A DNA stretch of 64,000 nucleotides from the NCBI GenBank assembly GCA_051294905.1, contig CM119373.1, forward strand, positions 27,900,001 to 27,964,000, read 5' to 3'. The notes under the pieces are model-generated. The model saw only the letters and a program-made list of their open reading frames with translations, had not been told where the DNA came from and did no database searches. Positions 5,570 through 51,607 of the stretch are shown here, piece by piece. How positions within the stretch are numbered: position 1 is the first letter of the stretch; each line of letters starts with the position of its first letter. This DNA comes from Botryllus schlosseri (taxonomy: Eukaryota). Both the position numbers and the translations under genes were made by a program.

Positions 5570-5890
5570 ATCACAGATGTCTATTTCTTGAACTGTCTGT
5601 CTTTACGAAGTAGTTTGGCATGAAAAAACTTTTTGACTTGAAAACTGACAAAACTTTATTTTAACGAAATCTGGATCAATGAGGAATTCCAGTAGTTACA
5701 TCACCCATTATGGCAGAGTTAATTAAATTTGTTACAGTACGGTACAACCAAAAATACTGTCCTAAACATTTGGGTGGAAAATGTGTCTGTCCTTACTAAG
5801 TAGCTTGCTGGGAATGGAGAAATAACGTTCAAAAGCAGCAGTTGTTGACTGGCAACACTGAGGTTGTGCCTACACTGCTGATGTCACATC
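5570..5890 (+). repeat. Dispersed repeat fragment
   Basis: Same-orientation diverged copy at about 44060-44400 (shared aacgaaatctg...gaattccagtagttac, gtgtctgtcctta, gaatggagaaa). Confidence 0.6.
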
Positions 5891-6936
5891 GTGTTACTTC
5901 ATTTTGGCAATGCTATCTGCATCACAATTTTCTATCATATGCGCTTCTTGATATAAGAACCAATGTCCACGCAGTCTTGCTTCAGCTAGGATATTGCATT
6001 GAGCATAACACCATGCCAACAGAATTGTTTCATTAGACTATATATGATTTACAACGGGCAGACAATGAGCGGCATTGTGTTTAGAACTACATTCATTGCA
6101 GTAAAGAATTTATTAACTCAAAGACTTTTTGTGTGCCTCTTATCAAGAGTTAACCGCACAATAACAAGCATTTCAGCTGCAGGAGGCAGCAAGGTAGAAG
6201 AAAAACCCTAGCCGACCCCTCGGGGGTACAAAGCAGGAATGCAGAGGGTATATGAGATGCATTGTGGAATTAATGCTTTATTCTGAGCCCAAATTAATTC
6301 AATGCCTACATAAAGTGGAATATTTTATAGGAAGATTTTTTCAACTCCAGAATTTTCTTTACGCTACGGTCAATCTCGTATCGATAGTTTTATTCCTTGC
6401 ATGTTGACACCATCCGGCACAAATATTGCTAGTACTAACGACAACAGAAAAACATACATATAATGTAAGAAACGAGATAAACCATCTACCCGGTAATCAT
6501 ATATTACTAGTATCGGTTGAGATCGTTGGAATCATTTAGACGACGCGTGTGTCATGTAACCCACTGGTGCAGAACTAGAAGGCCCCAGCTATTCGGTGCC
6601 GGACAATGCCAATGTTTTTGACAAAATTTATTCAATTTCCAAAAATTCAGGATTGTGCACGCTTAAGGCAATTACTTGAAAGGCGAAAAAAAGGAAATAG
6701 ATAAGTCTTGCAAATGGCGTTATTCGATATGGAAATACTATGTTTGTTTTTGGATCTGATAGTGATGAAATTACCCGTTTAAGAAGTTATGCTTGAATAG
6801 ACGGGGATACTAGAAATTTTATTAAAAGGTAGGAACGGGTTACGCACCAAATGGGTTTAGAAACACTGCTATAGATCAACAGTGTCAAAATCCCCAACGG
6901 TGGGATACTCTTGTTCATTTGGTCTTTCCCTCGCAG

Positions 6937-7054
6937 GGGTTACAACAGTGGAACCACATTATATATGAAGCCTCTAGCAACTCTAACCTACAATCCGGGT
7001 ACGGGATCGGAAACGGACTGGATTGTACTCAGCAGTGGCTCAGTATCGTTGTGA
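6937..7054 (+). CDS. Candidate orphan terminal exon (GYNSGTTLYMKPLATLTYNPGTGSETDWIVLSSGSVSL*)
   Basis: Strong acceptor ttcatttggtctttccctcgcag ending 6936, an open phase-2 frame to TGA at 7052-7054, and AATAAA at 7063-7068. Upstream exons are not securely found and no homology was recognised. Confidence 0.3.
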
Positions 7055-9217
7055 CAGCTGCAAATAAAACTACCGTATCTGCGAATTTAAAGACTTACAC
7101 CAGAACTACGGCAGCTGATTCAATTGTCACAAATTGAATATATTAAGAGATTCATTAGTTTGGCGCTTCAGATGCCCTGTGGTCTGACCGTCCCAATGTG
7201 ACTACAGTCCATTGTTAACAGTGCCGTGTTATTGATTTTAAGGTAGATAGATGCTGCAACTCACAAACGTGTGGCAACACTGGGAGTATAGGCTACAGCT
7301 TCGAATGTAAACCATTATACAAGTAATGTAGCTCTAAAGACTCCATACAGAAAGCGAAGTTGATATAGCCTACACACAGCTACTATGGTAAGCGAAATTT
7401 GCAGTTAGCCACCATTAACTTACTGATGCAGATCAGCAAATTCCAAGTAGCCTCTTGTCTGACTCAACCACGGGAAATCTGATGGCGCCATTGTTGCACA
7501 GAGAACTATTCTAAAAGGATTGAACAATCGCGAATAGGATCTATGCCGGCTGGTTCATATCTTCCAACAGTGACCCTAAATTGATAACATATTCGTACCA
7601 GGTAGGCTTTTTCGAATGCATCAGAGAAACGTTTAGAATTACATCAAGGATTTGAACTGTTTGGTATGCTTATCATGGTTATCACAACTCGATGATTCCT
7701 TCTTCACCCAATCATCACCGCTGATGATATAATTTATTTCAGAAATATCGCCCACCGTAACGGGACTTTACCCAATATGCTATTACAATATGTATTTTTA
7801 GGCACGGTACATGGAGAAACATGATCTCTCAGCACATATGCCCAGCACTTCCTGTAATCTACAAAACACCACTTAAAAGGCGCATAAAAAGTGAAGCGCC
7901 ATTTCCAGCCTTCCAATCACGTTACCAGTACATGCGTTAGAGTACACCACGGCAATCCTGCAATAAAAGGTAAAATCAGTAGGCATAATATCGAGATAGC
8001 ATGTTTTACCGGCTATATTAGGTGCACAGCAGGCTATGCTCCTGAGTTGTATTGCAAATTTTGGAACTTTTCTACAGTTTTCGGCAGTATCCTAAATACT
8101 CATAATTTGAGTAGCATGATGTTTTAAGCTCTATGAAGGATTCTTTCGCAACTATTTTATATTTTGCATGCAACTTTTTATGGCAAGTTTTATCAAGTAT
8201 CGAACGAAAGCTAAAGAAGCGATTGAAAAAACATGCTATAAATATTTTTCTGGTAGGTTCTGTTTTCATTGATCTGCATGACAAAGTGCGATGTGGTGGA
8301 TTAGATGCATCTCTACTATACCTATCACGTGACAGTTGGCTTGAGAGCTACAAGTCAAGCCGACAGTGCCCGAACCAAATTAAAAGTGGCAATATGACTC
8401 GACTTTTGGCCAAGCCCGCACTAACGAAAATAGGTTGTGACAAGTATTTTTAATAGAAGTTTTGTTGAGACAGTTGGATAGTTAAACTGTGTTTAGATAA
8501 ATGTCAATTCGTTATTTCGCAAGCAAGTTGTTATCTATTAAAAATTACAGTGTAAAGGAGGGATCTCCAACTTGTAACCCGCATGAGACTATTGTGCGGC
8601 CCGCTAGTCATTTTCACTTCAAATTGTATAATGAACTTAAATGGTTTCGTGAAATGAGAAAGTTTCACGTAGGTTTCAAATCGTTAGAAAATTGTATGCA
8701 TGATAGATTGACTAGCGAAGAAAGAAACGTTACAATTAAACACCCGGCAAATCTTAAACAGTTCAGTTTTACAACGGAACCTTTCAAGCATCTCATATAC
8801 TGATAATTTTTCTATTATTGCGCATAAATTCAACTATTCACAGCAACGTGCATTTTAAATAAGTGTAACTTTCTCAAAATTTTAGTGGAATAAAAACTTG
8901 CCCTAATTATAACCCAAATCTGATTTATCATCTGGAATAGACGCATACGCCAGTGAGTCTACAAATAGTTCAGAGCTTTTGCGCTTCGGTATGAATCAAA
9001 TCCTATTAACCCAATGTGTACCAAATGTACGTTGTGTATATAATTGAATATTTCCATGAATTTTGACTTCGCATCATGGAATGACGAAACGGGCATTTGA
9101 AAACTACAAAACGGTCGTTACGATTGAGTACAACCATTTTACCATTGTCGTCAAGCACAGACATGGAACGTCTCAAAGCCTCGTGTACTGACTGATCTAC
9201 TACACTCTTTCCTACAG

Positions 9218-11072
9218 ATGAATGCAAACTTCCTGATAGCGTTGCTGGCAATTGGATCCATGCTTGAAGTCCGGAGCGTCCATGGGATTCTACGGCAGAT
9301 TCTGGAACATTCACTTGGCGTTGGGTTAATGAGAACCGCTGTACCCGTTGTGAGGCGCCAAGCAGGAGATCAATTGAGAGTTGCCGAACATTTCCGTAAT
9401 TGAAATTTTTACCGACTTCGATTATCGCTTTGGATTAGCTTACGTACGATTAGCTTTAATTTTGATTTAATTCAAATGAACCCGTCTATAAAGGTATAAT
9501 TCCTTCAGTCCCAACATATTAGCATGTGGCACAATGAACAACGACGGTTGAGCATGCGACACCTGGGCATGTCGCTGCATATAGCCCCAGAACTAACGTT
9601 GTCCTCAACCCTAACCCCAATGTAAACCCGCATGCTAACCCCTAACGCAGGAATTCCCAACCTTTGAGTCACGGCTTCTGAAGGGCCATAAACACTTATC
9701 ATCAAGTCTATTCCCATATATCAATACAAATATATTATAATGCAATAAAATGATGGTGTACTCTTGAAGCTGCAGGAACAGACGACATCCAAAATTTGAC
9801 CATATATTGGGTAAAACGAAGCAAATTGTACCCGACGCGTAATGAAATTGGTATGCCATTTATGTTGCCTTTAGCATCAACATATATTGTTGTATATTTT
9901 GTCTCACAACTATTCAACGCAGTGTCTTGGATATTCAGTATGAAACGTGCCGGGCTCATCACACCAGCAGAGCAAAAACAAGTTTCACATTGACTTAATA
10001 TGTAATACCTCATTAATGTACTATCGTTTTCGTCTAGCATCGTATTTATATCATTTCCTAAGAGCCTTTATTGGAGGCCATATGATTTCATAATTCTAAC
10101 TACCGATTACGGTACCGACCATTTCTAAAATTTAGGAAAAACGTTTTTTAATTTTTTATAGGGTTGAAAAAGGGTTGAAAATAGGATGGCCATTGATTTT
10201 TCAACATATTCAAAGGGGGCACAGCGTGAGAAACTTGGGTAACCCCTACCCTAGCGCAACGCAGACCGACTCTTCAATCCACACGTCGAAATGTCAAATT
10301 GGTAAGTGTCGCAAGCTCACATGTCAACGGAACTATCGACTGCCCGTAGACAGCATATTCCAATCGTTTAATACAGTAAAACCAGCGTGTACTCAAAGGT
10401 GGTGTGGACACTCGGAAAATCACGTGACTGTCACGCCCAGAAACCTTTGATGACTTTGTTGCTACCGATCCGTCTGCAGCAGTAATTAAAGGCAAAGTCG
10501 CTATTGATCTTTGTTGATTTTGACTGCGTTCCATATCGAGTTAGGTGACGGGATTCGGTATGGTATATTTTGATGCTGTCATCTAGCACTGTACCAAGTT
10601 TCAAGGCTGTGAATCAATGATTAACGTATGAATTTCGCTGTCAAGTCGAGTATCTGGTAGATGAGCGCGCACCGATATATTGCCGACTTTGATGACGGAA
10701 TTACTATGCTAATATTTGGGTGACAATCCTGAAACTTACTGCGAAGTTGGATAACACAGCTAAGATACATCATACCGAATTTCGTCATCTATCTCGGTAT
10801 GGAACGCTTTCAAAATTCACATATACCAATATCAAATTTCCGGATAATTCCTTTATGCGGTAGGCTCAATGCCCAATCAGCGCACGTGCGGGCGTGACAG
10901 TCACGTGATTTTCCGAGTGTCCACACCACCTTTGAGTACACGCTGGTAGAACAGTGTCCTCGAATAACATTCACTTTTACCATTTACAGTTTTCGATGAT
11001 GACGACTTTGACGAAATGACACTCAAGTACGCTGGACAGGATTATGCCTCCGAACATGCGTTTGATATATAG
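9218..11072 (+). CDS. Secreted antimicrobial-peptide-like precursor, 86 aa, 2 coding exons (9218-9395, 10990-11072)
   Basis: MNANFLIALLAIGSMLEVRSVHG-ILRQILEHSLGVGLMRTAVPVVRRQA-G-DQLRVAEHFLFDDDDFDEMTLKYAGQDYASEHAFDI*. Donor C|GTAATT at 9396 and acceptor cacttttaccatttacag ending 10989 are phase-1 compatible. Acceptor directly before ATG; AATAAA at 11152. Layout matches tunicate clavanin/styelin precursors. Confidence 0.7.
10382..10946. mobile_element. MITE / foldback element with perfect 57-bp TIRs, in the peptide-gene intron
   Basis: CCAGCGTGTACTCAAAGGTGGTGTGGACACTCGGAAAATCACGTGACTGTCACGCCC at 10382 and its exact reverse complement ending 10946. The interior is also imperfectly palindromic. 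TSD not resolved. Confidence 0.8.
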
Positions 11073-11151
11073 CCTATAGCTGTAATGCCACCAGCACGAG
11101 CAATCACACATGTCGTACTACTTAAACCGAGTAGTATATAAATGGATGTAG

Positions 11152-11157
11152 AATAAA
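11152..11157 (+). promoter_or_regulatory. Putative polyadenylation signal of the peptide gene
   Basis: AATAAA about 80 nt after the TAG at 11070-11072. Confidence 0.4.
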
Positions 11158-11205
11158 TATCTTCAATGATCACGGTTTTGGCAATGACTTTGGTAGCATA
11201 ACTAC

Positions 11206-13413
11206 TAGGGGTGGTGTGAACCTCTGAAAGGTTCTGTGGAAACGCATACGTGAACTCATTATGACATTACGTGACGTCATATTGCTAACTCCTAACATGC
11301 ATTTCAGTGCAGTGATAATCTGTATTAATGTACAGTTGTGCAAGATACCTAGCGACGACTTGGAATACATAATGCCACAATGCTGAACTACACGTGTACA
11401 TTGACGTTTCAAACGTCGCCAAACGTATCAACCAGGGCAATCAAATCAGAGGTGGTCAAAGTAGTCAAGAAAGCTACTCGAGTAGAAGTAGAAGTAGCGA
11501 CGAGAAAATCTACTCAAGCACGAGTAGAAGTACTTCCTCCATAATCAACCTAAAACTACGTGAAGTAGAAGTAGAATTTGCTGGCATTAAATCTACTGAA
11601 GTAAGTAAGTAGTTTCGTAAACGGTCATAATACGTTCGCATGGACTTTCAAAAGTTGCAAATTAAGCAATGCGGAAGGTGCGGAGAGCTTAATGCACAAT
11701 GCACATTGATGTATCCCAGAAGGTACAGATTTCCGACAGCATGAGCATTCGATCGCATCGTGAGATGCAAATGATAGTTTTGCTATGGAAATGAGATACT
11801 AATCTTGTGTTTAAAACTCAAACATCCCGTTTTAGAAAATGTGATGCATGTTCCCTCACGCATATTACGACCTCTAGCTTAGTCGAAGAGCAATACGGAG
11901 AAGTTGTACGGATACGATGTTAACAATTTGCTCGATTCGCATACGATGATAAAAAATATGGTGTAACGTAAAAATGCCATAAAGTGTAATTGAATTTTAG
12001 GAAAATAGACTGCGATGCTACACTTAATTTTAAACTTAAAAATGTACAGTATGTTATTTATACAAAAGAACTGACACTAATTAGAACTCTAAGTAATGAT
12101 ACTGCGAATTGAACGAGAAATACCAATACTACATCAGAAAAGCGGAAAATGTATTTTATGTCTTTTGTCGAAACAGTTTTAACGGTTGTCTGCTATAACA
12201 GATCTAACGCTCAAAAACTGAGAGCCCACTTTTCCAGATTTGGACACGCCGTGGGCTGCTAGATTACGATATGATGGGTAAATGCATGCTAGATTGCGAA
12301 ACGGTAGTTTCAAACGTTATGATGGGCCATATTTACTGTGATGAAATATGTCATATGGGCGACAATGCGGTGCAATGCAACCTGCACCTAAATAATATTC
12401 ACTTCCGTGAAAACATATTTGTAACTTTATCTACTTGATGTGAATCGCGGCGGAAATTCTGGGTTTGATTAATTTTCTTAAAATTGAACGTTAGAACTCC
12501 ATAAAAATAGCCCGAAAATTCCCCAGTTTCTCTTTCTAATTGGAGGGTTACACTACTTCTACTTGACAAACTGAAAATAGCGAAAAGTAAGTAAGTAGAT
12601 CACAAAATATTACGAAGTAGAAGTAGCGAATATTTTATCTACTTGAGTAAGTACCAGAAGTAGAGGAAAACTACTCAAGTACTTCGAAAAAGTAGAAGTA
12701 CTTCGTTACTGACCACCTCTGAATCAAATGATAGAATATTCCCATAGAATCAATATCCTCCGTGACTTTGCCAACAATTTCGACGAGGACTTACAAGGGA
12801 ATACGCCTTAATGGTCCAGGCCAGACCAGACAATATATTCGGCGTCTGAGTATTGCTACGGTGATATTGAGCAGAGTGTAAAACAGGTTTCTATACTTTC
12901 CACCGATATTACCCCATTAACAAGTTATACAGCAGAAGCTAACACCATAATCGCACGCATTTGGTTTTTATGATGCAATAACCAATAAACATATGAATTC
13001 AAGATTGACCCAGTACGCCTGCTAGATTTTTTTTGCATCAGACTGCGATAGCAATTGCAGTGATTGGTTGAATAAGCGTCATTCGCTGTCTATCTAGTAC
13101 GAACATGTATAGTGTATTTCGCTCTTGATGTTGAGTCACCGAATTTTCACAAACGGGAAGCTGGATATTCCGAGCAAACGCACGCTCGTTTGGCGATGAA
13201 GTTTTATGCTGGTAGTGGCATGCGTAGATTGGCCCACGGTTGAAATACAGTAAATTACATCCGAAGACGTTACAATGAAATGAAAATTGTAGTACTTGAC
13301 ACAAAAGTTCACAGTGCAGAACCTACGAAGGTTCGTTTGTGAACGTCAACCTCTAAATTTCTGAGGTTCACACACAGAACGCAAACGTTAACCTCACGTT
13401 CACACCATCCCTA
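11206..13413. mobile_element. hAT non-autonomous element (family also at 59772-60695), interrupted by a nested hAT
   Basis: TIR TAGGGGTGGTGTGAAC / GTTCACACCATCCCTA. Perfect TSD ATAACTAC (11198-11205, 13414-13421). Once 11447-12729 is removed, the sequence is an inverted copy of 59772-60695. Confidence 0.9.
11447..12721. mobile_element. hAT non-autonomous element with AGTAGA-rich subterminal repeats (nested)
   Basis: TIR CAGAGGTGGTCA / TGACCACCTCTG. Perfect TSD AATCAAAT (11439-11446, 12722-12729). A second copy starts at 63562. Confidence 0.92.
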
Positions 13414-15612: not shown

Positions 15613-18600
15613 TTATTCGATTTGGTTGTGCGCATCTTCGACAATGTTCTCTGAAGCACTGCCCGTCGAATCGCTGATGTATCCCAAGTTATCAGCACCG
15701 TGGCAAGGCGCTGCATGATCATTACCTCCGGTATGCGTATCGCGAAAACCGCTAGGCGATGACACAGATTCCTCAGGTTCGCGAGAGTTACTGTGTTCAG
15801 ATTGTCGTCTTGATGGTTCCACTTCAACGATTTCAATATGGTCTGCTGTCATCGAGATTTGCACAAACTCTCTATTGTCAGTTTGAACGTTTGCGCCGTT
15901 ATTGTTATTAATATCATTATTGTTACTGTTGGTATCGTAACTTGGAGGTGGTAATTCTGTTTCCATGGACTGGTCGTTTTCTTTTAAGTCTTCGGATATT
16001 CTTTTCGACTTTTTATCTGTAAATACGTGACAGAGTATTGTCTCATTCATGCGGGCGTGCGATGTAGAGTAAGGCTAGGTTTATTGCATGGGTGTGCAAT
16101 AGGGCTGTTCAAAAATAACTTTTTTTCCCGGATTCCATCCATTCACTGATTAAATTGTCAGGTTACCTTAAAAAACGCTGCACACCAAATTTGGTTCGAT
16201 TCTAACAAGTATAGGACTCCGCAGATCCAATTAAAATTTTTAATTTATTATGGAAAATTGAAAAAAAAATTTTCCAAATTTTTTTTGCCAACCCCATGAA
16301 ATTGTTGAGCTGTCTTCAAAGACGTTGCAAAACAAATTTGAGTCAATTCCGACCAGTAGAAGCGGAGTTATGTGAGTTTTTCGAGGAGAATCCTCGGATG
16401 ATCCTTGATCGGTGGATAATCCGCGATTTATCAACGAAAAACTCACATAACTCCGCTTCTACTGGTCGGAATTGACTCAAATTTGTTTTGCAACGTCTTT
16501 GAAGACAGCCCAACAATTTCATGGGGTTGGCAAAAAAATTTGGAAAATTTTTTTTTTCAATTTTCCATAATAAATTAAAATTTTTAATTGGATCTGCGGA
16601 GTCCTATACTTGTTAGAATCGAACCAAATTTGGTGTTCAGCGTTTTTTTAGGGTAACCTGACAATTTAATCAGTGAATGGCTGGAATCCGGGAAAAAAGG
16701 TTATTTTTGAACAGCCCTAGTGTGCAACCATTTCGGCAAGGATCCATATGTTCTTAACGCGGTGACACTCCGAGACGTAGGCTACTTTTGCTTTCTCTTA
16801 GTTGCAAAGCCCAGTGAAATACTCGGAATTGTTGACGGGTATAGCGACACCTTTCTACACAATTCGATATAGGCCCACATATAACAGTTGTAAAGGCTTC
16901 ACGGAAATCAATAATACGCCTCACTCATACCCATTTTCTCCTTATTCTTCGTTACAAACTGTTCGTATGTAGGCAACACGAGGGATCCATTAGAAGTTGC
17001 GATGCTAAAATTATCCAAATCCAAGTCATCCGGTACTGTAAAATATTCAATAGCTCTTGACAATGTAAAATCCATTATGCGAGTCGTGAATCCGGGATAT
17101 CTACTCTCAAGGGTTCGCTATACGTTAAGGGTATTTTTGTCAGTAATATTAAATGATATTATGTTTCCGTATTATGAAATGCGGTGCTATAAAGCGCGTG
17201 GCTTCATATTCAGACGCTCAAGTTGGAAGACGGACTTTCAGCATTCCCGTGACCACATAACTGGCCACGGATTATTTTGTGGCCGGATATGAGGGATGTC
17301 ATGGCCCTCCATGAAAAACCGGCACGGCTGGCTACGAAACTTTCTTGACCTGCCATGGAAAACTCAGACATTCATTGCCAACTGAAATATACCAGCTGAG
17401 AATTAATGACCAGCACTGTCCGCGATCAAATCGTTGCCAAACATATGATCGTTGATCATTCTTGTACTTTTATGGGCATACAGTCGATAGCAATAGGTGA
17501 GCTCGAGAACGTTTTGGACCGTATATCAGCAAAATACCAAAAAATTGTTATACATTGTAGATGAAAATTCGCTGTGGCCGGCCAGAAAATTTGTGTCCAG
17601 TGGGTGGCCACGGGACCGTTAAGATCCCGTCTGCAAGTTGGTTGGAAATTGACGCATAAATATAACTGATGTGAAAACGCGTTAGCTAACATAAATCTGT
17701 CGTAGGCTAGTGATATGTAAAGATTTGGGCATTGCAATAGAACTAAGCTCCGGGCCAAAGTATGTGTGAAGTAGACATGTTTCAACTAATTTAGATAATA
17801 TTCTAGCAAGTTTACAGCTCGCGTTGTGAACCACACTGGGTCGTGGTTAAAAAACGCATCATAAAATTGGTTGTATTGCACCACCGGACACAATATCTAA
17901 TAATATTCCTACTCAAACGAATTACTAGTACAAACACTTTGTAATTCTGAATCTCAGTTTAATAAGCATAAACGAACATTTCGCCCATTTCCGATAGTCT
18001 GTCAATAGAAGCGATAATTTCAGGCAATTTTGAAGTGGTATCGATCGGATATGACAGAAGTAAACGTACTACAGCAAGTATCAGGTGTGGTCATCGCACC
18101 AACCCACAGAATACACATACAGTCCAACATTATGAGTGGTTTTAAAGTTACTAATGAAATCCCAATGTCGCTACGAGTACATCAAGTAAACAACAATTGG
18201 AAAATTTGTGCTATATGTAGTCCGCGTTGTTCAATATTTAGACGCGACCACTTTGTTAAGAGAAAAGTGCAGTTACTTTGTAATAAATATGATGAATAAA
18301 ATAATATCACTATCGATGACTTTGGACGTGATAAAGAACACTTTGAGTTGAATACTGACGAAACGGCGTGCCCTCCAGAATTACAGCTATAAAGGGGATG
18401 CAAATGAAGCCAGTGGCAATTTCTTCTGCAAAATTCAGCTCGTACACAAATACCAGTCGGAGTGAATAAGCCCTTTATTATGTCATATATATTACGCCTG
18501 GGATAAGTTGTATTAGGCTTGTGGAATAGATTGTCATGGAGTTTATATGTTCGCCACTTACCATGCCTTTAATAGCCAAACGTAGGTGGATACTTTGGAC

Positions 18601-21600
18601 GTTACAGCGTGCATCTTACGACTAACATATAATGGCTTATGCCACTAAATATTGATACAATTTCCGATGATATATTCATTTGCCACTATATAGGGGGTAT
18701 TTGACCCGGTCCTTATAACAATTGCACTCAAAACTACACTCTGCTTTGCAAAACTTACAGTGTAAAGTAGTAAAAATGCGTAACAAACCGAGTATGTATT
18801 ACTAAGAAAAAGTAGAAGTACCTCGTTTCTAACCCCTTCTGAATTGCGAGCATCAATTTCTGGTTTGGCTATACGTACTGTTTTCACTAACAGCGATGCA
18901 GGTACAATTCGATCGTAATAATATCTAGTTAAGCGAAGGGTTACTGCAACTATAGGCCACAACTCACACTCGAATCCCAGATTATCGTATGATGGCGGGA
19001 GGTCCGAGAACATCTGTCTGCGCCTTTCCTCGCGCCGATGGCGCCTGTGCGCTCTGCGCATTGCGTTAAGTCGAACCAAAGCTCTCCGGCGCTCTTGCTC
19101 GTATAATCTCGCGTATCTGTACCTGGAAATGCGAACAGAAATACAATTATTATGTAGTACAGGGGTTCTCAACTTCCCTTGTATAACGGTCCGCATTTTA
19201 ACGGCAAAAGACGCTGCGGGCCGCAGAACATTATTACCATGTATTTGTGGGCTACTATGAAATTAAGGATACTGTAGCCTATTTACCAGTCGCATGCGGG
19301 CCTTAAACCCTTCCACCAGAGAACCGAACCCTCTGCTTCAAAGCGTGAGCAAGCGAGTATGAAATTACGGTCACTTTTTCGTAACAGACGCCATTGTCAC
19401 ATTGAGTTCACAGTGATATAAGAAAAAGTCTGGCGTTCGGGGTCATTTCTGAGCAAACCGATCAACCCTTCTCTTTTCATTCCATAGCGGGGGGGGGGGG
19501 GGTCCTACATCATTAATCACATAAGTTAGCTTTGTCAAGTTGATGTTTTTCCGCTGGTCACCCTACCACGTTTGCCGAGGGGCCAGCATTTTCTCTGCAA
19601 ATATGTCCGCTCTGATAAAATGCACCCAGATAACTAGCTATGCAATGTCTGTGGAGTCGGTGAATTCGTCCAATGCTAGGCTAAAGTAGTCTACGCGGCA
19701 ACGTGTTTCAGAACATGCAATAAAAGATCGAATGACATAACTGTTACTCATTTGGTCACGGTTGAATCAGACAAATGTAGCTTCGAAATATGTCAGGTGG
19801 TGTTGTCATTGCTGCTAAATTCCGGAAACAGCGGATACCCGCAGAGTTTTATTGAAATCACACCTTCGCTAGCAAATTTCTTGGGTTTTGCTATATTCCC
19901 AGCAATTTTGAACGATGTGTCTGCAACGTCGTCGGCAATTTTACAATGCTTCGAAATATGGATTGCTGGGCTTGACATCTAGCTGGCAACGTTTTTCTAA
20001 GATCAGGCGATAGGTAGGCTATAATTCCAGACGAAACTGTCGTGGTATAATTTTAAGGTTCAACGCTTCGTTACGACTTACGAAATCTGTTTTTCGACAA
20101 ATATGGCACATCGGTTTTCCATTTATATCTGAGAAAGCAAATTCATCGTTCCACGCAGAGTTACAAACTCAGTGTACGCCGTTTAATTTACCATTCCTTG
20201 TTCTTGTTTCTGTTCAAACCATTCGCGGTGAGTGAAACACGCTCTTTAAAAAATGTACCACCTAGCGGGATTCTCTTGAACCAGAGTCAACCGAATACAG
20301 ATTCAAAACAATAACAATCTAAACTCGAGCATATATCAAGAAACCAGAACACATCAAAAATGAGTAATCAAACGAAACAGAGACGGTGCGATAAGATAGC
20401 TAAGCAGCTAAATCAATATGTAACAATATCGTGTCAGTAATAATTCGGGGTGAGAACCCCTGATGTAGGATATCAATTGATATTACATGGATTTGTTCTA
20501 GAAATGTAGAAATTGATGCATGATAGCATCAGCCTCGTTAGCAAGGGTGATCCGTAACAAAGGACGTCTACTTTAACTTTTTCGGAGTACTCAAATAGGT
20601 TTTTCACTCACCTCATAACATATTTCACGCAAACAACTTGGACCAGTGTTCAATGATATTCCGATGATGCGAAATAGAAACAAAATCTTTTATTCGATCC
20701 CGGTATGGAACACCGTAAAAGTCAACTCAGGGAAAGGCCCGGCTGTTATGTGCTAATATAGATGCCGGATCAGCGCACATCGGCGCATCTATACATACTC
20801 GATGTAACTGTAGTTTCCAAACTTTTTCGACTCATTGCCCCCTTTTCAAAATCCACACCGATCATCGCCCCCCAAATATTGGGAACCGAAAAATGGGCAT
20901 GAAAACAGTAATCAAAGGCGATTTGACTAAATAAAAGCGCAACTTTTCGGCTTGACCTCTAAATTGCACTTTTACAGATAAATTTTCGTGAGTTGACTAA
21001 AAAAAGTCATTTCTCCGACTTGACTCCAAGCCGTTTTACCGCGACATCACCCCCTTCGTCTGTTTCCACCCCCTCATCCCCCATCGTTATTTTTGCCCCT
21101 AGACCGCCAAATCGCTCCTGGACGGCGATATCACTCACGTTAGGAACCACTGCTCTATACATACTTCGATAACGGAATTACTTCCCTAATCATTCGGTAT
21201 GAACCTTGAAACCAGACACTTTGTCGAATGACATGATCAAAATGTACCATGCAAAACCGAGTCATCCACCCCAGAAGGGAACACCTCACACCTAGACATA
21301 GCCGACTTCGATCATGAAATCGCTACCTCAATCATTAAGTGTTGAAACGGTACAGTTCAGTGTTAAATGATATCATTAAGTTATACCACGCGAAATTTTG
21401 TGAGACATCCCGGTATGAAAAAAAAATCGAAATCAAACAGACCAAAATCGGCTTTTGCGCAAAACCACTGACGGGTCGACAGGGACAAATATATCAAAGT
21501 CACCAAAGTGCGAGGGACGTCTTTTCCCAATGTGCCCCAGATCATTTCTGAGTATACATACTGATATCTAGGCCTCATTTTGGGTTACAAATAATACTAA

Positions 21601-22792
21601 AATTAGGATGTCCTCAATTTGTGGCATATCGCAGCCGGAACATTATGCCGTGGCAGCCCTGCGCAGCATGATGGAGCATGGACCGGAGCCGAATTGGATT
21701 TCCGGACGGATTTTCTCATTGTTGGCTGGTGTCGCATTAGAGCCAGATCAGTACTTGTTACTAAGAATATGACAGCCTTATACTCTCTTCCACCATCGAA
21801 TCAATAGTTAAAGTGAAGCGTATATGGAAATAAACCATATGGTAAGTCCAAGTTGGCGTAATTACTTCAGATAAGGGTTGGGTTTGATCTTTGAGTTTTT
21901 AATGTACTGTTCGCATTGTTTTAATCAATATTTAATACTGTCCTGTGAGTAGATACTTACTACCGGAGTTGCTAGGGCACTATCACCGTCATTTCTACAA
22001 TCCGGCCTAAGAGTCAGACCGGAATCGCACCAGAGCTTTAAAAACAGGATCGGAGTAGGACCAGAGAATTTGTCGATCCAGTACGCAGTACTGCGCAGTA
22101 CTATCGGAACCTAGAGTGACGCGGGACACGCCGGCTAAGAACCCGTCTTAAAAACCATAGTGCACACTGTGCACAGGCTGCTTAAACCAAGAAAACCAAG
22201 TCATGACTATGCCTACAACTCACCTATTGATCGCCATGCAGCACGGTGCTAATCCCAACACAATCAACATGATTCCCGCATAAGTCGGGAACTGCTCGCC
22301 ATTGACCAGAAATATAACTCCCAGCAGAATGAACAGGAATCCGCTGAATATCCCGGTAATCAAATTCCCGACCCAGTGCTTCCGATAAAAGTCGCAACAA
22401 GAATAATTCCGCTCGCCCGAATCAGACAATGTTCTAATCTCGCGGTCCAAGGCATCGCTCGTGTCGCTTCTGGTATCGGAGGCTGCCGGCCTGGTAACGG
22501 CTAACTCGCCATATTCGACTTCTATGCTCATACTTTCTGTTCGTGGTCGAGGCACGGTACGTGCAGGCCTAGCCGTGTTTGCATTGCAGTTATTGGGCTC
22601 AATATTCGAGTCGGAAGCCTCGTTTTGGTTTATTCCTTGGCTTGCGCTTTGTACAGAGTTGTCCCGCGTGGTGTCTAGTACCTGGTTGGTCTCTGTGGTA
22701 GAAACGTCATTGGTTTCGCTTGACTGATTATTCGCGCTTGAGTTGTCGTCTTCGGTATTCTGGTTCGCGCGGTTTCCATATTCCACTTGCAT
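15613..22792 (-). CDS. Two-transmembrane protein with two PPxY motifs, 375 aa, 3 coding exons (22224-22792, 18968-19122, 15613-16016)
   Basis: Junctions are phase-compatible: AG|gtgagt to ttcgcatttccag|G, and T|gtgagt to gtatttacag|AT. Ser/Asn/Thr-rich N-terminus, hydrophobic hairpin WVGNLITGIFSGFLFILLGVIFLV...TYAGIMLIVLGLAPCCMAI, Arg-rich helix, LPPSY and PPPSY motifs, acidic tail. An alternative start at 22840 is possible. Confidence 0.8.
16100..16719. mobile_element. Young foldback MITE, near-perfect palindrome with arms of about 284 bp
   Basis: Arms 16100-16383 and 16435-16719 are almost exact reverse complements around a 51-bp spacer. Termini TAGGGCTGTTC / GAACAGCCCTA. Perfect TSD GTGTGCAA. 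Confidence 0.95.
19160..19740 (-). mobile_element. Decayed Charlie/SPIN-type hAT transposase relic
   Basis: Terminus CAGGGGTTCTCAAC at 19160. The minus strand of about 19560-19700 reads VDYFSLALDEFTDSTDIA*LVIWVHF, matching the hAT YFSLALDESTD..D.AQL motif. Confidence 0.65.
20808..21150. mobile_element. Charlie-type MITE (family also at 22897-24107 and 41702-42023)
   Basis: Ends CTGTAGTTTCCAAAC / GTTAGGAACCACTG. Body shares cgactcat.gccccctt, ccacaccgatcat and gccgtttta with the other copies. No clean TSD. Confidence 0.7.
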
Positions 22793-22896
22793 GTCTGCGT
22801 TAAAGGAAAGCTGGTTATGACATCGCCGTTTTGCTGGCATAACGTGACATATACGACAGGGATAAGGATTTTAACCTAATATCTATAGGCCTTGAC

Positions 22897-37794: not shown

Positions 37795-51607
<13,813 letters not shown>

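What the first reader, a model, noticed from the sequence alone, without database searches (positions are those of the whole stretch)
9218..11072. Hidden two-exon precursor of a candidate new amidated antimicrobial peptide
Seen: the ORF track shows only 61 aa. Splicing to a small exon 1.6 kb downstream gives signal peptide, then ILRQILEHSLGVGLMRTAVPVVRRQA (26 aa, four Arg, one Glu, amphipathic), then G-DQ, then an Asp-rich tail (FDDDDFDEM). Established: tunicate clavanin and styelin precursors are signal, cationic helix, Gly amide donor followed by Asp, acidic C-terminal propiece, and Ciona MAM/PAP peptides are similar. The mature sequence resembles none that I recall. Inference: a lineage-specific host-defence peptide ending in Ala-amide that gene finders could easily miss.
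Basis: partly seen in the sequence, partly recalled or inferred. Interest (0 to 1): 0.8.

Follow-up and report, generated by a model that had tools for sequence, protein, structure and literature searches.

The report
Unannotated sea-squirt secreted peptide gene
The predicted splice is real: this is a small, previously unlisted three-exon gene of a colonial sea squirt for an 86-residue secreted peptide precursor laid out like sea-squirt antimicrobial-peptide precursors, but its positive core is weak for a germ-killer and no activity is known.

Summary
Observation confirmed. The 61-aa ORF (9218-9403) exists. Assembled RNA contigs from two independent studies carry exactly the predicted GT..AG joint 9395|10990. 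They also carry a second joint, 7969|9218, to an upstream non-coding exon. The gene therefore has three exons, and its CDS (9218-9395 + 10990-11072) encodes 86 aa: a signal-like N-terminus, a Cys-free 26-residue basic stretch (+3), Gly50-Asp51, then a 36-residue acidic tail (-9).

It is single-copy in its genome. It has no detectable homologue in 5.8 bn or 1.84 bn proteins, Pfam, PDB or the ESM Atlas. The genome is Botryllus schlosseri or a sibling species: published primers and the botryllin epitope match exactly.

The layout and the Gly|Asp boundary fit published ascidian cationic-helical AMP precursors, and the protein passes that paper's numeric screen. It passes only marginally. As one helix the 26-mer has a hydrophobic moment of 0.082, worse than 85% of its own shuffles. 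Two of its four Arg form an RR convertase site. Expression is low. A mass-spectrometry-verified Ciona haemocyte signalling peptide uses the same Gly|Asp amidation route, so the processing logic is not specific to AMPs.

Verdict: a real orphan secreted-peptide gene. The AMP function is plausible (about 0.35) but unproven. The scan has already noted several similar precursors elsewhere in this genome.

The parts
7871..7892 (+). TATA-like motifs (TTAAAAG at 7872-7878, CATAAAAAG at 7884-7892) just upstream of the 5' ends of the RNA contigs; putative core promoter
   Evidence: Read from the sequence. RNA contigs end at 7902 and 7907. Inference only.
7902..7969 (+). Exon 1, non-coding 5' UTR. An in-frame TAA at 7964-7966 closes the frame upstream of the start codon. 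A 2-codon uORF (ATG 7932) is present in the reference but removed by T7933G in the RNA alleles.
   Evidence: Joint 7967(7969)|9216(9218), GT..AG, in contigs of X9 and X10; sequence; translation.
7970..9217 (+). Intron 1 (1248 nt, GT..AG)
   Evidence: table 5
9218..9395 (+). Exon 2. The start codon is its first base, and A sits at -3 in the spliced mRNA. It encodes residues 1-59 plus the first base of codon 60.
9218..9286 (+). Signal-peptide-like N-terminus (residues 1-23). It has an uncharged 12-residue hydrophobic core. V-H-G|I fits the -3/-1 rule, and V-R-S|V (20|21) fits as well.
   Evidence: Heuristic only (4 of 82 control ORFs score as signal-like). SignalP was not available.
9287..9364 (+). 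Proposed mature 26-residue peptide (residues 24-49, ILRQ...RRQA). Net charge +3, no Cys, GVG hinge and a Pro, RR at residues 46-47.
   Evidence: Polymorphisms M38I (9331) and A41T (9338) appear in RNA contigs.
9365..9370 (+). Gly50-Asp51: candidate ascidian-type cleavage and amide-donor site
   Evidence: Sequence. Precedents: styelins and clavanins are cut N-terminal of D/DD (PMC7387483), and CiEMa is cut between Gly and Asp and amidated, verified by MS (PMC10888236). Inference for this gene.
9396..10989 (+). Intron 2 (1594 nt, phase 1, GTAA..ACAG)
   Evidence: Joint 9395|10990 in contigs of X9 and X10, with 91 and 98 letters on the shorter side
10381..10947 (.). Non-autonomous transposon (MITE or foldback-like) inside intron 2, with 58-nt perfect terminal inverted repeats. 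It is not part of the gene's function.
   Evidence: at least 598 candidate copies genome-wide at 87-92% identity
10990..11072 (+). Coding part of exon 3: the rest of the acidic tail (Asp run, two Tyr next to acidic residues) and stop codon TAG 11070-11072. The tail, residues 51-86, has net charge -9.
   Evidence: K72N (11027) and two synonymous variants appear in an RNA contig.
11073..11165 (+). 3' UTR with AATAAA at 11152-11157. The RNA contig is laid up to 11165.

Best explanation
This is a genuine, single-copy, lineage-restricted three-exon gene of a botryllid sea squirt. Its ~0.42-kb mRNA encodes an 86-residue, Cys-free pre-propeptide.

Shown: the transcript and both GT..AG junctions; the reading frame, with an in-frame stop upstream of the first AUG; the charge-segregated layout.

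Inferred: the N-terminal ~23 residues act as a signal peptide. The pro-form (net -6) is stored with its acidic tail masking the basic stretch. Cleavage between Gly50 and Asp51 follows the ascidian route known from styelins, clavanins and CiEMa. Gly50 is then converted to a C-terminal amide, giving a 26-residue peptide amide (calculated monoisotopic mass 2910.72).

The most likely role is a host-defence or immune peptide of the ascidian 'signal - cationic - anionic' class, acting on membranes as a hydrophobic, weakly cationic helix-hinge-helix. Confidence that the gene is real and encodes a secreted peptide precursor is about 0.75. Confidence that the product is specifically an antimicrobial peptide is about 0.35. 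The figure given for this field is for the specific AMP or host-defence reading.
For: - Spliced RNA contigs from two studies carry both joints. A third study's contig covers exon 2.
- Nine small transcriptome-sized contig sets hold 13-87% of the exon-2 words (eight of them 47-87%). The eight of these that were also listed for the whole 2.1-kb stretch hold 5-13% of its words, as expected for spliced RNA.
- The first AUG opens the 86-aa ORF, and an in-frame TAA lies upstream.
- An ORF this long is unlikely by chance (about 2-3%).
- The CDS is less polymorphic than the 5' UTR exon (Fisher p = 0.004-0.006).
- A signal-like start, a Cys-free sequence and a -9 tail are each rare in control ORFs.
- The protein meets the published Ciona LCAMP criteria that I could compute: length 50-100 aa, no Cys, 18-residue windows with 0<=H<=0.6, muH>=0.1 and z>=+3 (windows 31-33 and 37-39), and an anionic helical C-terminal region (windows 47-68). 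My implementation reproduces that paper's Table 3 exactly.
- A Gly-Asp boundary recurs in ascidian precursors (KH.S908.1 '...AALGDEG', styelins, clavanins, CiEMa).
- The host is a styelid. The genome carries botryllin and matches B. schlosseri primers exactly.
Against: - The whole 26-mer has muH 0.082, against 0.35-0.585 for Ci-PAP-A, Ci-MAM-A and clavanin A, and it is not better than its own shuffles.
- Net charge is only +3, the bottom of the screen's range. Two of the four Arg form an RR site that a prohormone convertase could cut, leaving a +1 22-mer.
- The acidic tail (-9) far over-compensates the basic part.
- Expression is low: k-mer depth is 3-6 in positive runs, and there were no reads on the CDS among 12.9 million records sampled from a bulk RNA run.
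- No paralogues exist, whereas AMPs often form families.
- There is no similarity to botryllin or to anything else.
- The signal peptide was judged by rule of thumb only.
- Tissues and conditions of the positive runs are coded and unknown.
Confidence: 0.35

Rival explanations
1. It is a secreted signalling peptide (haemocyte cytokine-like, endocrine or neuropeptide) rather than a direct antimicrobial. It uses the same precursor and the same Gly|Asp amidation route, or cleavage at RR46-47, but the product acts on a receptor.
For: - CiEMa of Ciona is a species-restricted, haemocyte-derived, MS-verified amidated peptide cut between Gly and Asp, with immune-modulatory rather than killing roles (PMC10888236).
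- Low, apparently restricted expression.
- Weak charge and weak amphipathicity for an AMP.
- An RR dibasic site is present.
Against: - At 26 residues, hydrophobic and followed by a long acidic tail, the product is closer to the LCAMP layout than to typical short ascidian neuropeptides.
- Gly50 is not followed by a basic pair, as it is in classical neuropeptide precursors.
- No homologue was found in any other species.
- No receptor evidence exists.
Confidence: 0.27
2. It is a young, possibly de novo, transcribed ORF with little or no function. The transcript is real, but the peptide is not made in useful amounts, or the signal-like and charge features are fortuitous.
For: - An orphan with no homologue anywhere and no paralogue.
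- Low expression.
- An ORF of this length arises in 2-3% of control sequences.
- Three of five coding polymorphisms seen are non-synonymous.
Against: - Canonical three-exon structure, with the AUG in good context and a poly(A) signal.
- The CDS is 4-8 times less polymorphic than the 5' UTR exon.
- A signal-like start, absence of Cys and a -9 tail together were not seen in any of 82 control ORFs.
- The transcript is found in runs of at least five studies.
Confidence: 0.2
3. The functional product is the acidic C-terminal peptide (residues 51-86 or 48-86), for example an anionic or sulfated secreted peptide. The basic stretch would serve only as a spacer or pro-region.
For: - The tail dominates the charge of the pro-form (net -6, pI 4.7).
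- Two Tyr lie in an acidic neighbourhood (Gln-Asp-Tyr), the kind of context that favours tyrosine sulfation (established knowledge).
- Cleavage after RR would expose an N-terminal Gln that could cyclise.
Against: No precedent was retrieved here for ascidians. In the published ascidian precursors the acidic region is treated as the pro-piece. One non-synonymous variant (K72N) was seen in the tail.
Confidence: 0.08

Closest known systems
Ciona linear cationic alpha-helical AMP (LCAMP) precursors: Ci-MAM, Ci-PAP, KH.S908.1 and others (PMC7387483)
   Same: - A 50-100-aa Cys-free precursor ordered signal, basic region, acidic helical region.
- Val/Ala/Gly/Arg-rich basic part with an Arg cluster near its end.
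- Acidic residues, not basic pairs, at the boundary (for example '...AALG-DEG').
- Species-restricted sequences.
   Different: - No sequence homology is detectable.
- Charge is +3 against +4 to +12.
- Whole-peptide hydrophobic moment is 0.08 against 0.12-0.38.
- Single copy rather than a family with a shared signal peptide.
- Activity is untested.
Styelins and clavanins of Styela clava, and botryllin of Botryllus schlosseri (PMC9966394; PMC10608444)
   Same: - Same ascidian family (Styelidae), and for botryllin the same species.
- The secreted pre-propeptide carries its mature peptide directly after the signal peptide.
- Styelins and clavanins have C-terminal amidation and cleavage N-terminal of Asp.
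- An acidic extension follows the mature peptide.
   Different: - Botryllin is a 158-aa precursor with a 37-residue, +11 mature peptide.
- BLASTP finds no alignment with this protein.
- Clavanins are His/Phe-rich and strongly amphipathic (muH 0.585).
- Those peptides are abundant in haemocytes, whereas this mRNA is rare in the runs examined.
CiEMa, a haemocyte-derived amidated peptide of Ciona (PMC10888236)
   Same: An orphan, species-restricted secreted precursor. The mature C-terminus is produced by cleavage between Gly and Asp followed by amidation, which is the same processing proposed here.
   Different: CiEMa is 14 residues long, not cationic-hydrophobic, and has an unusual N-terminal cleavage. 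Its function is immune signalling. No sequence similarity was tested, because its precursor sequence was not retrieved.

Membership tests
Ascidian LCAMP precursor class (criteria of PMC7387483) | Precursor length 50-100 aa | tested here: met
   86 aa
Ascidian LCAMP precursor class (criteria of PMC7387483) | N-terminal signal peptide, secreted, no transmembrane segment (SignalP, TMHMM, DeepLoc) | tested here: inconclusive
   Only a rule-of-thumb test was possible. It found an uncharged hydrophobic core and -3/-1 sites at 20|21 and 23|24, and 4 of 82 control ORFs pass the same rule. The named predictors were not available.
Ascidian LCAMP precursor class (criteria of PMC7387483) | No cysteine after the signal peptide | tested here: met
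   Zero Cys in 86 aa; 6 of 82 control ORFs are Cys-free
Ascidian LCAMP precursor class (criteria of PMC7387483) | An 18-residue window with hydrophobicity 0-0.6, hydrophobic moment at least 0.1 and net charge +3 to +10 | tested here: met
   Windows starting at residues 31-33 and 37-39 pass (muH 0.26-0.32, z = +3), which is the lowest allowed charge. The scale reproduces the paper's Table 3 exactly.
Ascidian LCAMP precursor class (criteria of PMC7387483) | Alpha-helical propensity of the cationic segment | tested here: inconclusive
   Single-sequence AlphaFold2 gives one helix over residues 3-60 at pLDDT 84, which carries little weight. The segment contains G-V-G and Pro.
Ascidian LCAMP precursor class (criteria of PMC7387483) | C-terminal anionic helical region (z -3 to -10) | tested here: met
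   All windows starting at residues 47-68 pass; the tail has z = -9
Ascidian LCAMP precursor class (criteria of PMC7387483) | Aggregation index within range; demonstrated antimicrobial activity | not testable with these tools
   AGGRESCAN and wet assays are not available
Styelin / clavanin / botryllin sequence family | Detectable sequence homology of the precursor | tested here: not met
   No BLASTP alignment with the botryllin exon of the same genome at E<=100. phmmer against 1.84 bn representatives gave 0 hits at E<=1e-3. No shared words in 5.8 bn proteins.
Styelin / clavanin / botryllin sequence family | Mature peptide followed by Gly (amide donor) and Asp, then an acidic extension | tested here: met
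   ...RRQA-G-D-Q..., tail z = -9. The rule is taken from PMC7387483 and PMC10608444.
Styelin / clavanin / botryllin sequence family | Strongly cationic or His-rich, clearly amphipathic mature helix | tested here: not met
   z = +3 and muH 0.082; 85% of its own shuffles reach this value
Styelin / clavanin / botryllin sequence family | Expression in haemocytes (morula cells) | not testable with these tools
Classical neuropeptide or prohormone precursor | Peptides flanked by mono- or dibasic sites, with the amide-donor Gly followed by basic residues | tested here: not met
   Gly50 is followed by Asp. The single RR (residues 46-47) lies inside the proposed peptide.
Classical neuropeptide or prohormone precursor | Conservation across related species | tested here: inconclusive
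   No homologue was found in the protein collections. However, no tunicate genomes could be searched at DNA level, and a 61-aa query has little power.

The most novel reading that the evidence does not exclude
This is a previously unknown, botryllid-specific amidated 26-residue host-defence peptide: a helix-hinge-helix of low charge and high hydrophobicity. It would be released from an over-acidic pro-form by the ascidian Gly|Asp cleavage-amidation route, and would define a new AMP family unrelated to styelins, clavanins and botryllin.
Probability: 0.3. Interest if true: 0.55.

Novelty: new member of a known kind. Interest (0 to 1): 0.4.

Why it matters
The finding shows that short, multi-exon secreted-peptide genes are absent from very large public protein collections even for a well-studied model tunicate, and that they can be recovered from raw sequence plus public RNA data.

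If the peptide is active, it would add a second, unrelated AMP to Botryllus, where only botryllin is described. It would be an unusually weakly charged, salt-water-adapted template.

Together with CiEMa, styelins and clavanins, it is one more substrate for the still unidentified ascidian protease that cuts between Gly and Asp before amidation. A collection of such substrates makes that enzyme's specificity testable.

Tried and rejected
- Homology searches with the 61-aa exon product all came back empty: word-indexed 5.8 bn proteins, exhaustive phmmer on 1.84 bn representatives, ESM Atlas features, Pfam and PDB sequences.
- Own-genome six-frame and DNA searches found no paralogue.
- Rfam on 7500-12000 gave no RNA family, so nothing suggests a structured ncRNA.
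- Full-text searches for four fragments of the peptide, and for clavanin or styelin precursor junction strings, gave no papers. The clavanin and styelin precursor sequences therefore could not be aligned from a tool-supplied source; I did not type them from memory.
- An NF-kB-type motif scan found no site near this promoter, and the count in the window is not above chance.
- High RNA depth just downstream (11316-11615) looked like a neighbouring gene. It is a ~170-bp interspersed repeat with at least 2417 candidate copies.
- The short high-depth contigs at 5824-6137 were not resolved.
- The antisense 102-aa ORF 9006-9314 is rejected as the gene, because both introns are GT..AG on the + strand.
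- The similarity of the signal peptide to the Ciona 'MNKSALL..LL..G' consensus, and a faint resemblance of 'ILRQILEH' to CRH-type peptides (from memory), were considered and set aside as too short to test.
- Single-sequence AlphaFold2 gave a generic long helix. I did not run fold searches on it.
- The full spliced 86-aa protein could not be passed to the remote search and fold tools by reference, so those used the 61-aa exon product.

Full report
**What is in the sequence.** A GT lies at 9396-9397, one base into codon 60. A pyrimidine-rich ...TTTACAG acceptor ends at 10989. Joining 9395 to 10990 keeps the frame for 27 more codons, up to TAG 11070-11072, and gives an 86-residue product.

After Gly50-Asp51-Gln52 come nine more residues (LRVAEHFLF) before the Asp run.

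**RNA evidence.** A search for runs holding exon 2 (9190-9400) found nine small, transcriptome-sized contig sets of the same organism from several studies. They hold 13-87% of the exon's words, and eight of them hold 47-87%. The eight of these sets that were also listed for the whole 2.1-kb stretch, introns included, hold only 5-13% of its words. This is the pattern expected for spliced RNA.

I laid three such sets and one raw RNA run on 5800-11700, with these results:
- The joint 9395|10990 ('skips 1594, GT..AG') appears in contigs of X9 (study P6) and X10 (study P7), with 91 and 98 letters on the shorter side.
- A second joint, 7967|9216 (GT..AG with the cut two bases to the right, i.e. 7969|9218), appears in the same two runs.
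- One 339-nt contig of X10 runs 7907-7967 / 9216-9395 / 10990-11087 and so contains the whole CDS.
- An X9 contig continues to 11165, just past AATAAA at 11152-11157.
- X12 (study P5) covers 9216-9391.
- No contig shows intron retention.

The gene therefore has three exons, not two. The upstream exon (~7902-7969) is non-coding. In the spliced mRNA an in-frame TAA (7964-7966) lies two codons before the ATG. The ATG is the first base of exon 2 and has A at -3. A two-codon uORF in the reference is abolished by T7933G in the RNA alleles. TATA-like motifs lie 10-30 nt upstream of the contig ends (inference).

**Is it coding?**
- An ORF of at least 86 aa arises in 1.9% of dinucleotide shuffles of the 422-nt mRNA and in 3% of equally long genomic control windows.
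- The alleles in the RNA contigs differ from the reference at 5-6 of 61-66 positions in the 5' UTR exon. In the coding exons they differ at only about 1-2% of positions (Fisher p = 0.004-0.006, counts).
- Five coding variants were seen: M38I, A41T, K72N and two synonymous changes. This is too few for a dN/dS statement.
- Of 82 control ORFs of at least 60 aa in the window, 4 have a signal-like start by my simple rule, none has a tail of charge -8 or lower, and 6 lack Cys. The real product has all three features.

I take translation into a secreted product as likely (about 0.75), but it is not shown.

**Organism.** Earlier notes of the scan called this genome a tunicate. I tested this with primers published for Botryllus schlosseri (PMC9966394).
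- The botryllin qRT-PCR forward primer (19 nt) matches the genome exactly. A second copy with one mismatch lies 55 kb away.
- The BsEF1-alpha forward primer (18 nt) also matches exactly.
- The first locus encodes a signal peptide followed by a strongly basic peptide ending ...GWYNKHK, which is the published botryllin epitope.

The genome (495 Mb) is therefore B. schlosseri or a very close sibling. That makes it a styelid, the family of Styela clava, which makes clavanins and styelins.

**Relatives.** None were found. The searches were: word-indexed search of 5.8 bn proteins, exhaustive phmmer of 1.84 bn representatives, ESM Atlas, Pfam, PDB sequences, own genome at protein and DNA level, and BLASTP against the botryllin exon. 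Fragments of the peptide occur in no paper of the library.

Even the gene's own product is absent from the protein collections. I could not inspect the annotation of this assembly itself.

**Comparison with known ascidian peptide precursors.** A Ciona genome screen (PMC7387483) defines linear cationic alpha-helical AMP precursors as follows:
- a Cys-free secreted protein of 50-100 aa;
- an 18-residue window with hydrophobicity 0-0.6, moment at least 0.1 and charge +3 to +10;
- usually a C-terminal anionic helical region.

The paper notes that the boundary carries Asp or Glu rather than basic pairs, and that styelins and clavanins are cut N-terminal of D and DD. A review confirms their C-terminal amidation (PMC10608444).

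I re-implemented the HeliQuest calculation and it reproduces the paper's Table 3 to three decimals. The Botryllus protein passes, but barely. Only the windows starting at residues 31-33 and 37-39 qualify (moment 0.26-0.32). They have the minimum charge of +3, and that charge depends on the RR pair at 46-47. The tail windows 47-68 all meet the anionic criteria.

The comparators are Ci-PAP-A (0.35, +4), Ci-MAM-A (0.38, +6) and clavanin A (0.585). Shuffling tests give the following:
- 85% of shuffles of the 26-mer's own residues are at least as amphipathic as the real order.
- The two halves on either side of the G-V-G hinge (24-36, moment 0.448; 37-49, moment 0.381) are only mildly better than their shuffles (8% and 13%).
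- The known peptides score 0-8% in the same test.

'Amphipathic' is therefore not supported for a continuous helix. A helix-hinge-helix is permitted but not demonstrated. Single-sequence AlphaFold2 gave a generic helix over residues 3-60, which I give little weight.

**Processing.** The Gly|Asp cleavage-plus-amidation step is real in ascidians. Mass spectrometry verified it for CiEMa, a Ciona-specific haemocyte peptide with immune-modulatory roles (PMC10888236). It also shows that the processing logic does not point specifically to an antimicrobial.

The RR at 46-47 is an alternative, classical convertase site. Cutting there would give a 22-residue, +1 peptide and a Gln-initiated acidic peptide.

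**Expression.** K-mer depth of the positive contigs is 3-6. A bulk RNA run sampled at 6% (12.9 million records) has no read on the CDS. The low level seen here argues for a restricted cell type or condition. The run identities are coded, so tissue cannot be assigned.

**Surroundings.**
- Intron 2 holds a 567-bp element with 58-nt perfect terminal inverted repeats. It belongs to a family with at least 598 candidate copies.
- The high RNA depth at 11316-11615 comes from a ~170-bp interspersed repeat with at least 2417 candidate copies, not from a neighbouring gene.
- No Rfam family matches 7500-12000.
- Nothing within about 4 kb on either side looks like a paralogue or an obviously related gene.

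**Verdict.** This is a real, orphan, apparently unlisted gene for a small secreted pre-propeptide of the ascidian signal / basic / Gly-Asp / acidic type.

My estimates for what the product does:
- antimicrobial or host-defence peptide: about 0.35, the single most likely reading;
- signalling peptide: about 0.27;
- young gene of little function: about 0.2;
- functional acidic tail: about 0.08.

It is a new member of a known kind. The scan has already recorded several other precursors of this layout on other DNA of the same genome, which lowers its singularity.

Noticed in passing
window 10381-10947: A 567-bp non-autonomous transposon with 58-nt perfect terminal inverted repeats sits in intron 2. 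The genome holds at least 598 candidate copies at 87-92% identity. The element also matches its own reverse strand at about 70% over its full length, so it is foldback-like. No clear target-site duplication is visible by eye (AAA|...|AGA).
   Followed up: partly
window 11447-11615: A ~170-bp interspersed repeat (SINE- or MITE-like) has at least 2417 candidate copies genome-wide at 92-95% identity. A 33-56-nt core (11447-11502) is embedded in very many different RNA contigs at depths up to thousands, and some reads begin right after a template-switch oligo at 11451.
   Followed up: partly
L002 (G000:C11:9115917-9118935) and L003 (G000:C11:9170679-9173697): Two botryllin-like loci lie about 55 kb apart on one contig. 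L002 encodes the signal peptide plus the basic mature N-terminus ending GWYNKHK. L003 carries a one-mismatch primer site and an open frame containing the published pro-piece epitope (...DRDEYDGAL). The botryllin paper could not tell whether its variants were alleles or paralogues; this assembly suggests a tandem duplication.
   Followed up: partly
window 7932-7934: A two-codon upstream ORF (ATG CGT TAG) in the 5' UTR exon is present in the reference allele. In the alleles seen in RNA contigs of two studies, T7933G destroys it.
   Followed up: no
window 38689-38698 and 39715-39724: Two palindromic NF-kB/Rel-type decamers (GGGAAATCCC, GGGGAATCCC) lie 1 kb apart at the start of the stretch another note calls a galectin-protease fusion gene. 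The window-wide count is not above chance (4 found, 2.8 expected).
   Followed up: no
window 15613-16050(-), 18645-19196(-), 22220-22840(-): Three long minus-strand ORFs have no Pfam match. Two contain a PPSYD motif (PPxY-like), and the third ends in a hydrophobic, membrane-like segment. They may be a small family of PPxY-motif membrane proteins.
   Followed up: no
window 5824-6137: Short, high-depth RNA contigs (46-60 nt) map at 5824-5867 and 5939-5996. One exon-like piece at 6085-6137 belongs to a 376-nt contig that continues into sequence unlike this stretch (5800-11700). This is either a repeat or an exon of an upstream gene.
   Followed up: no
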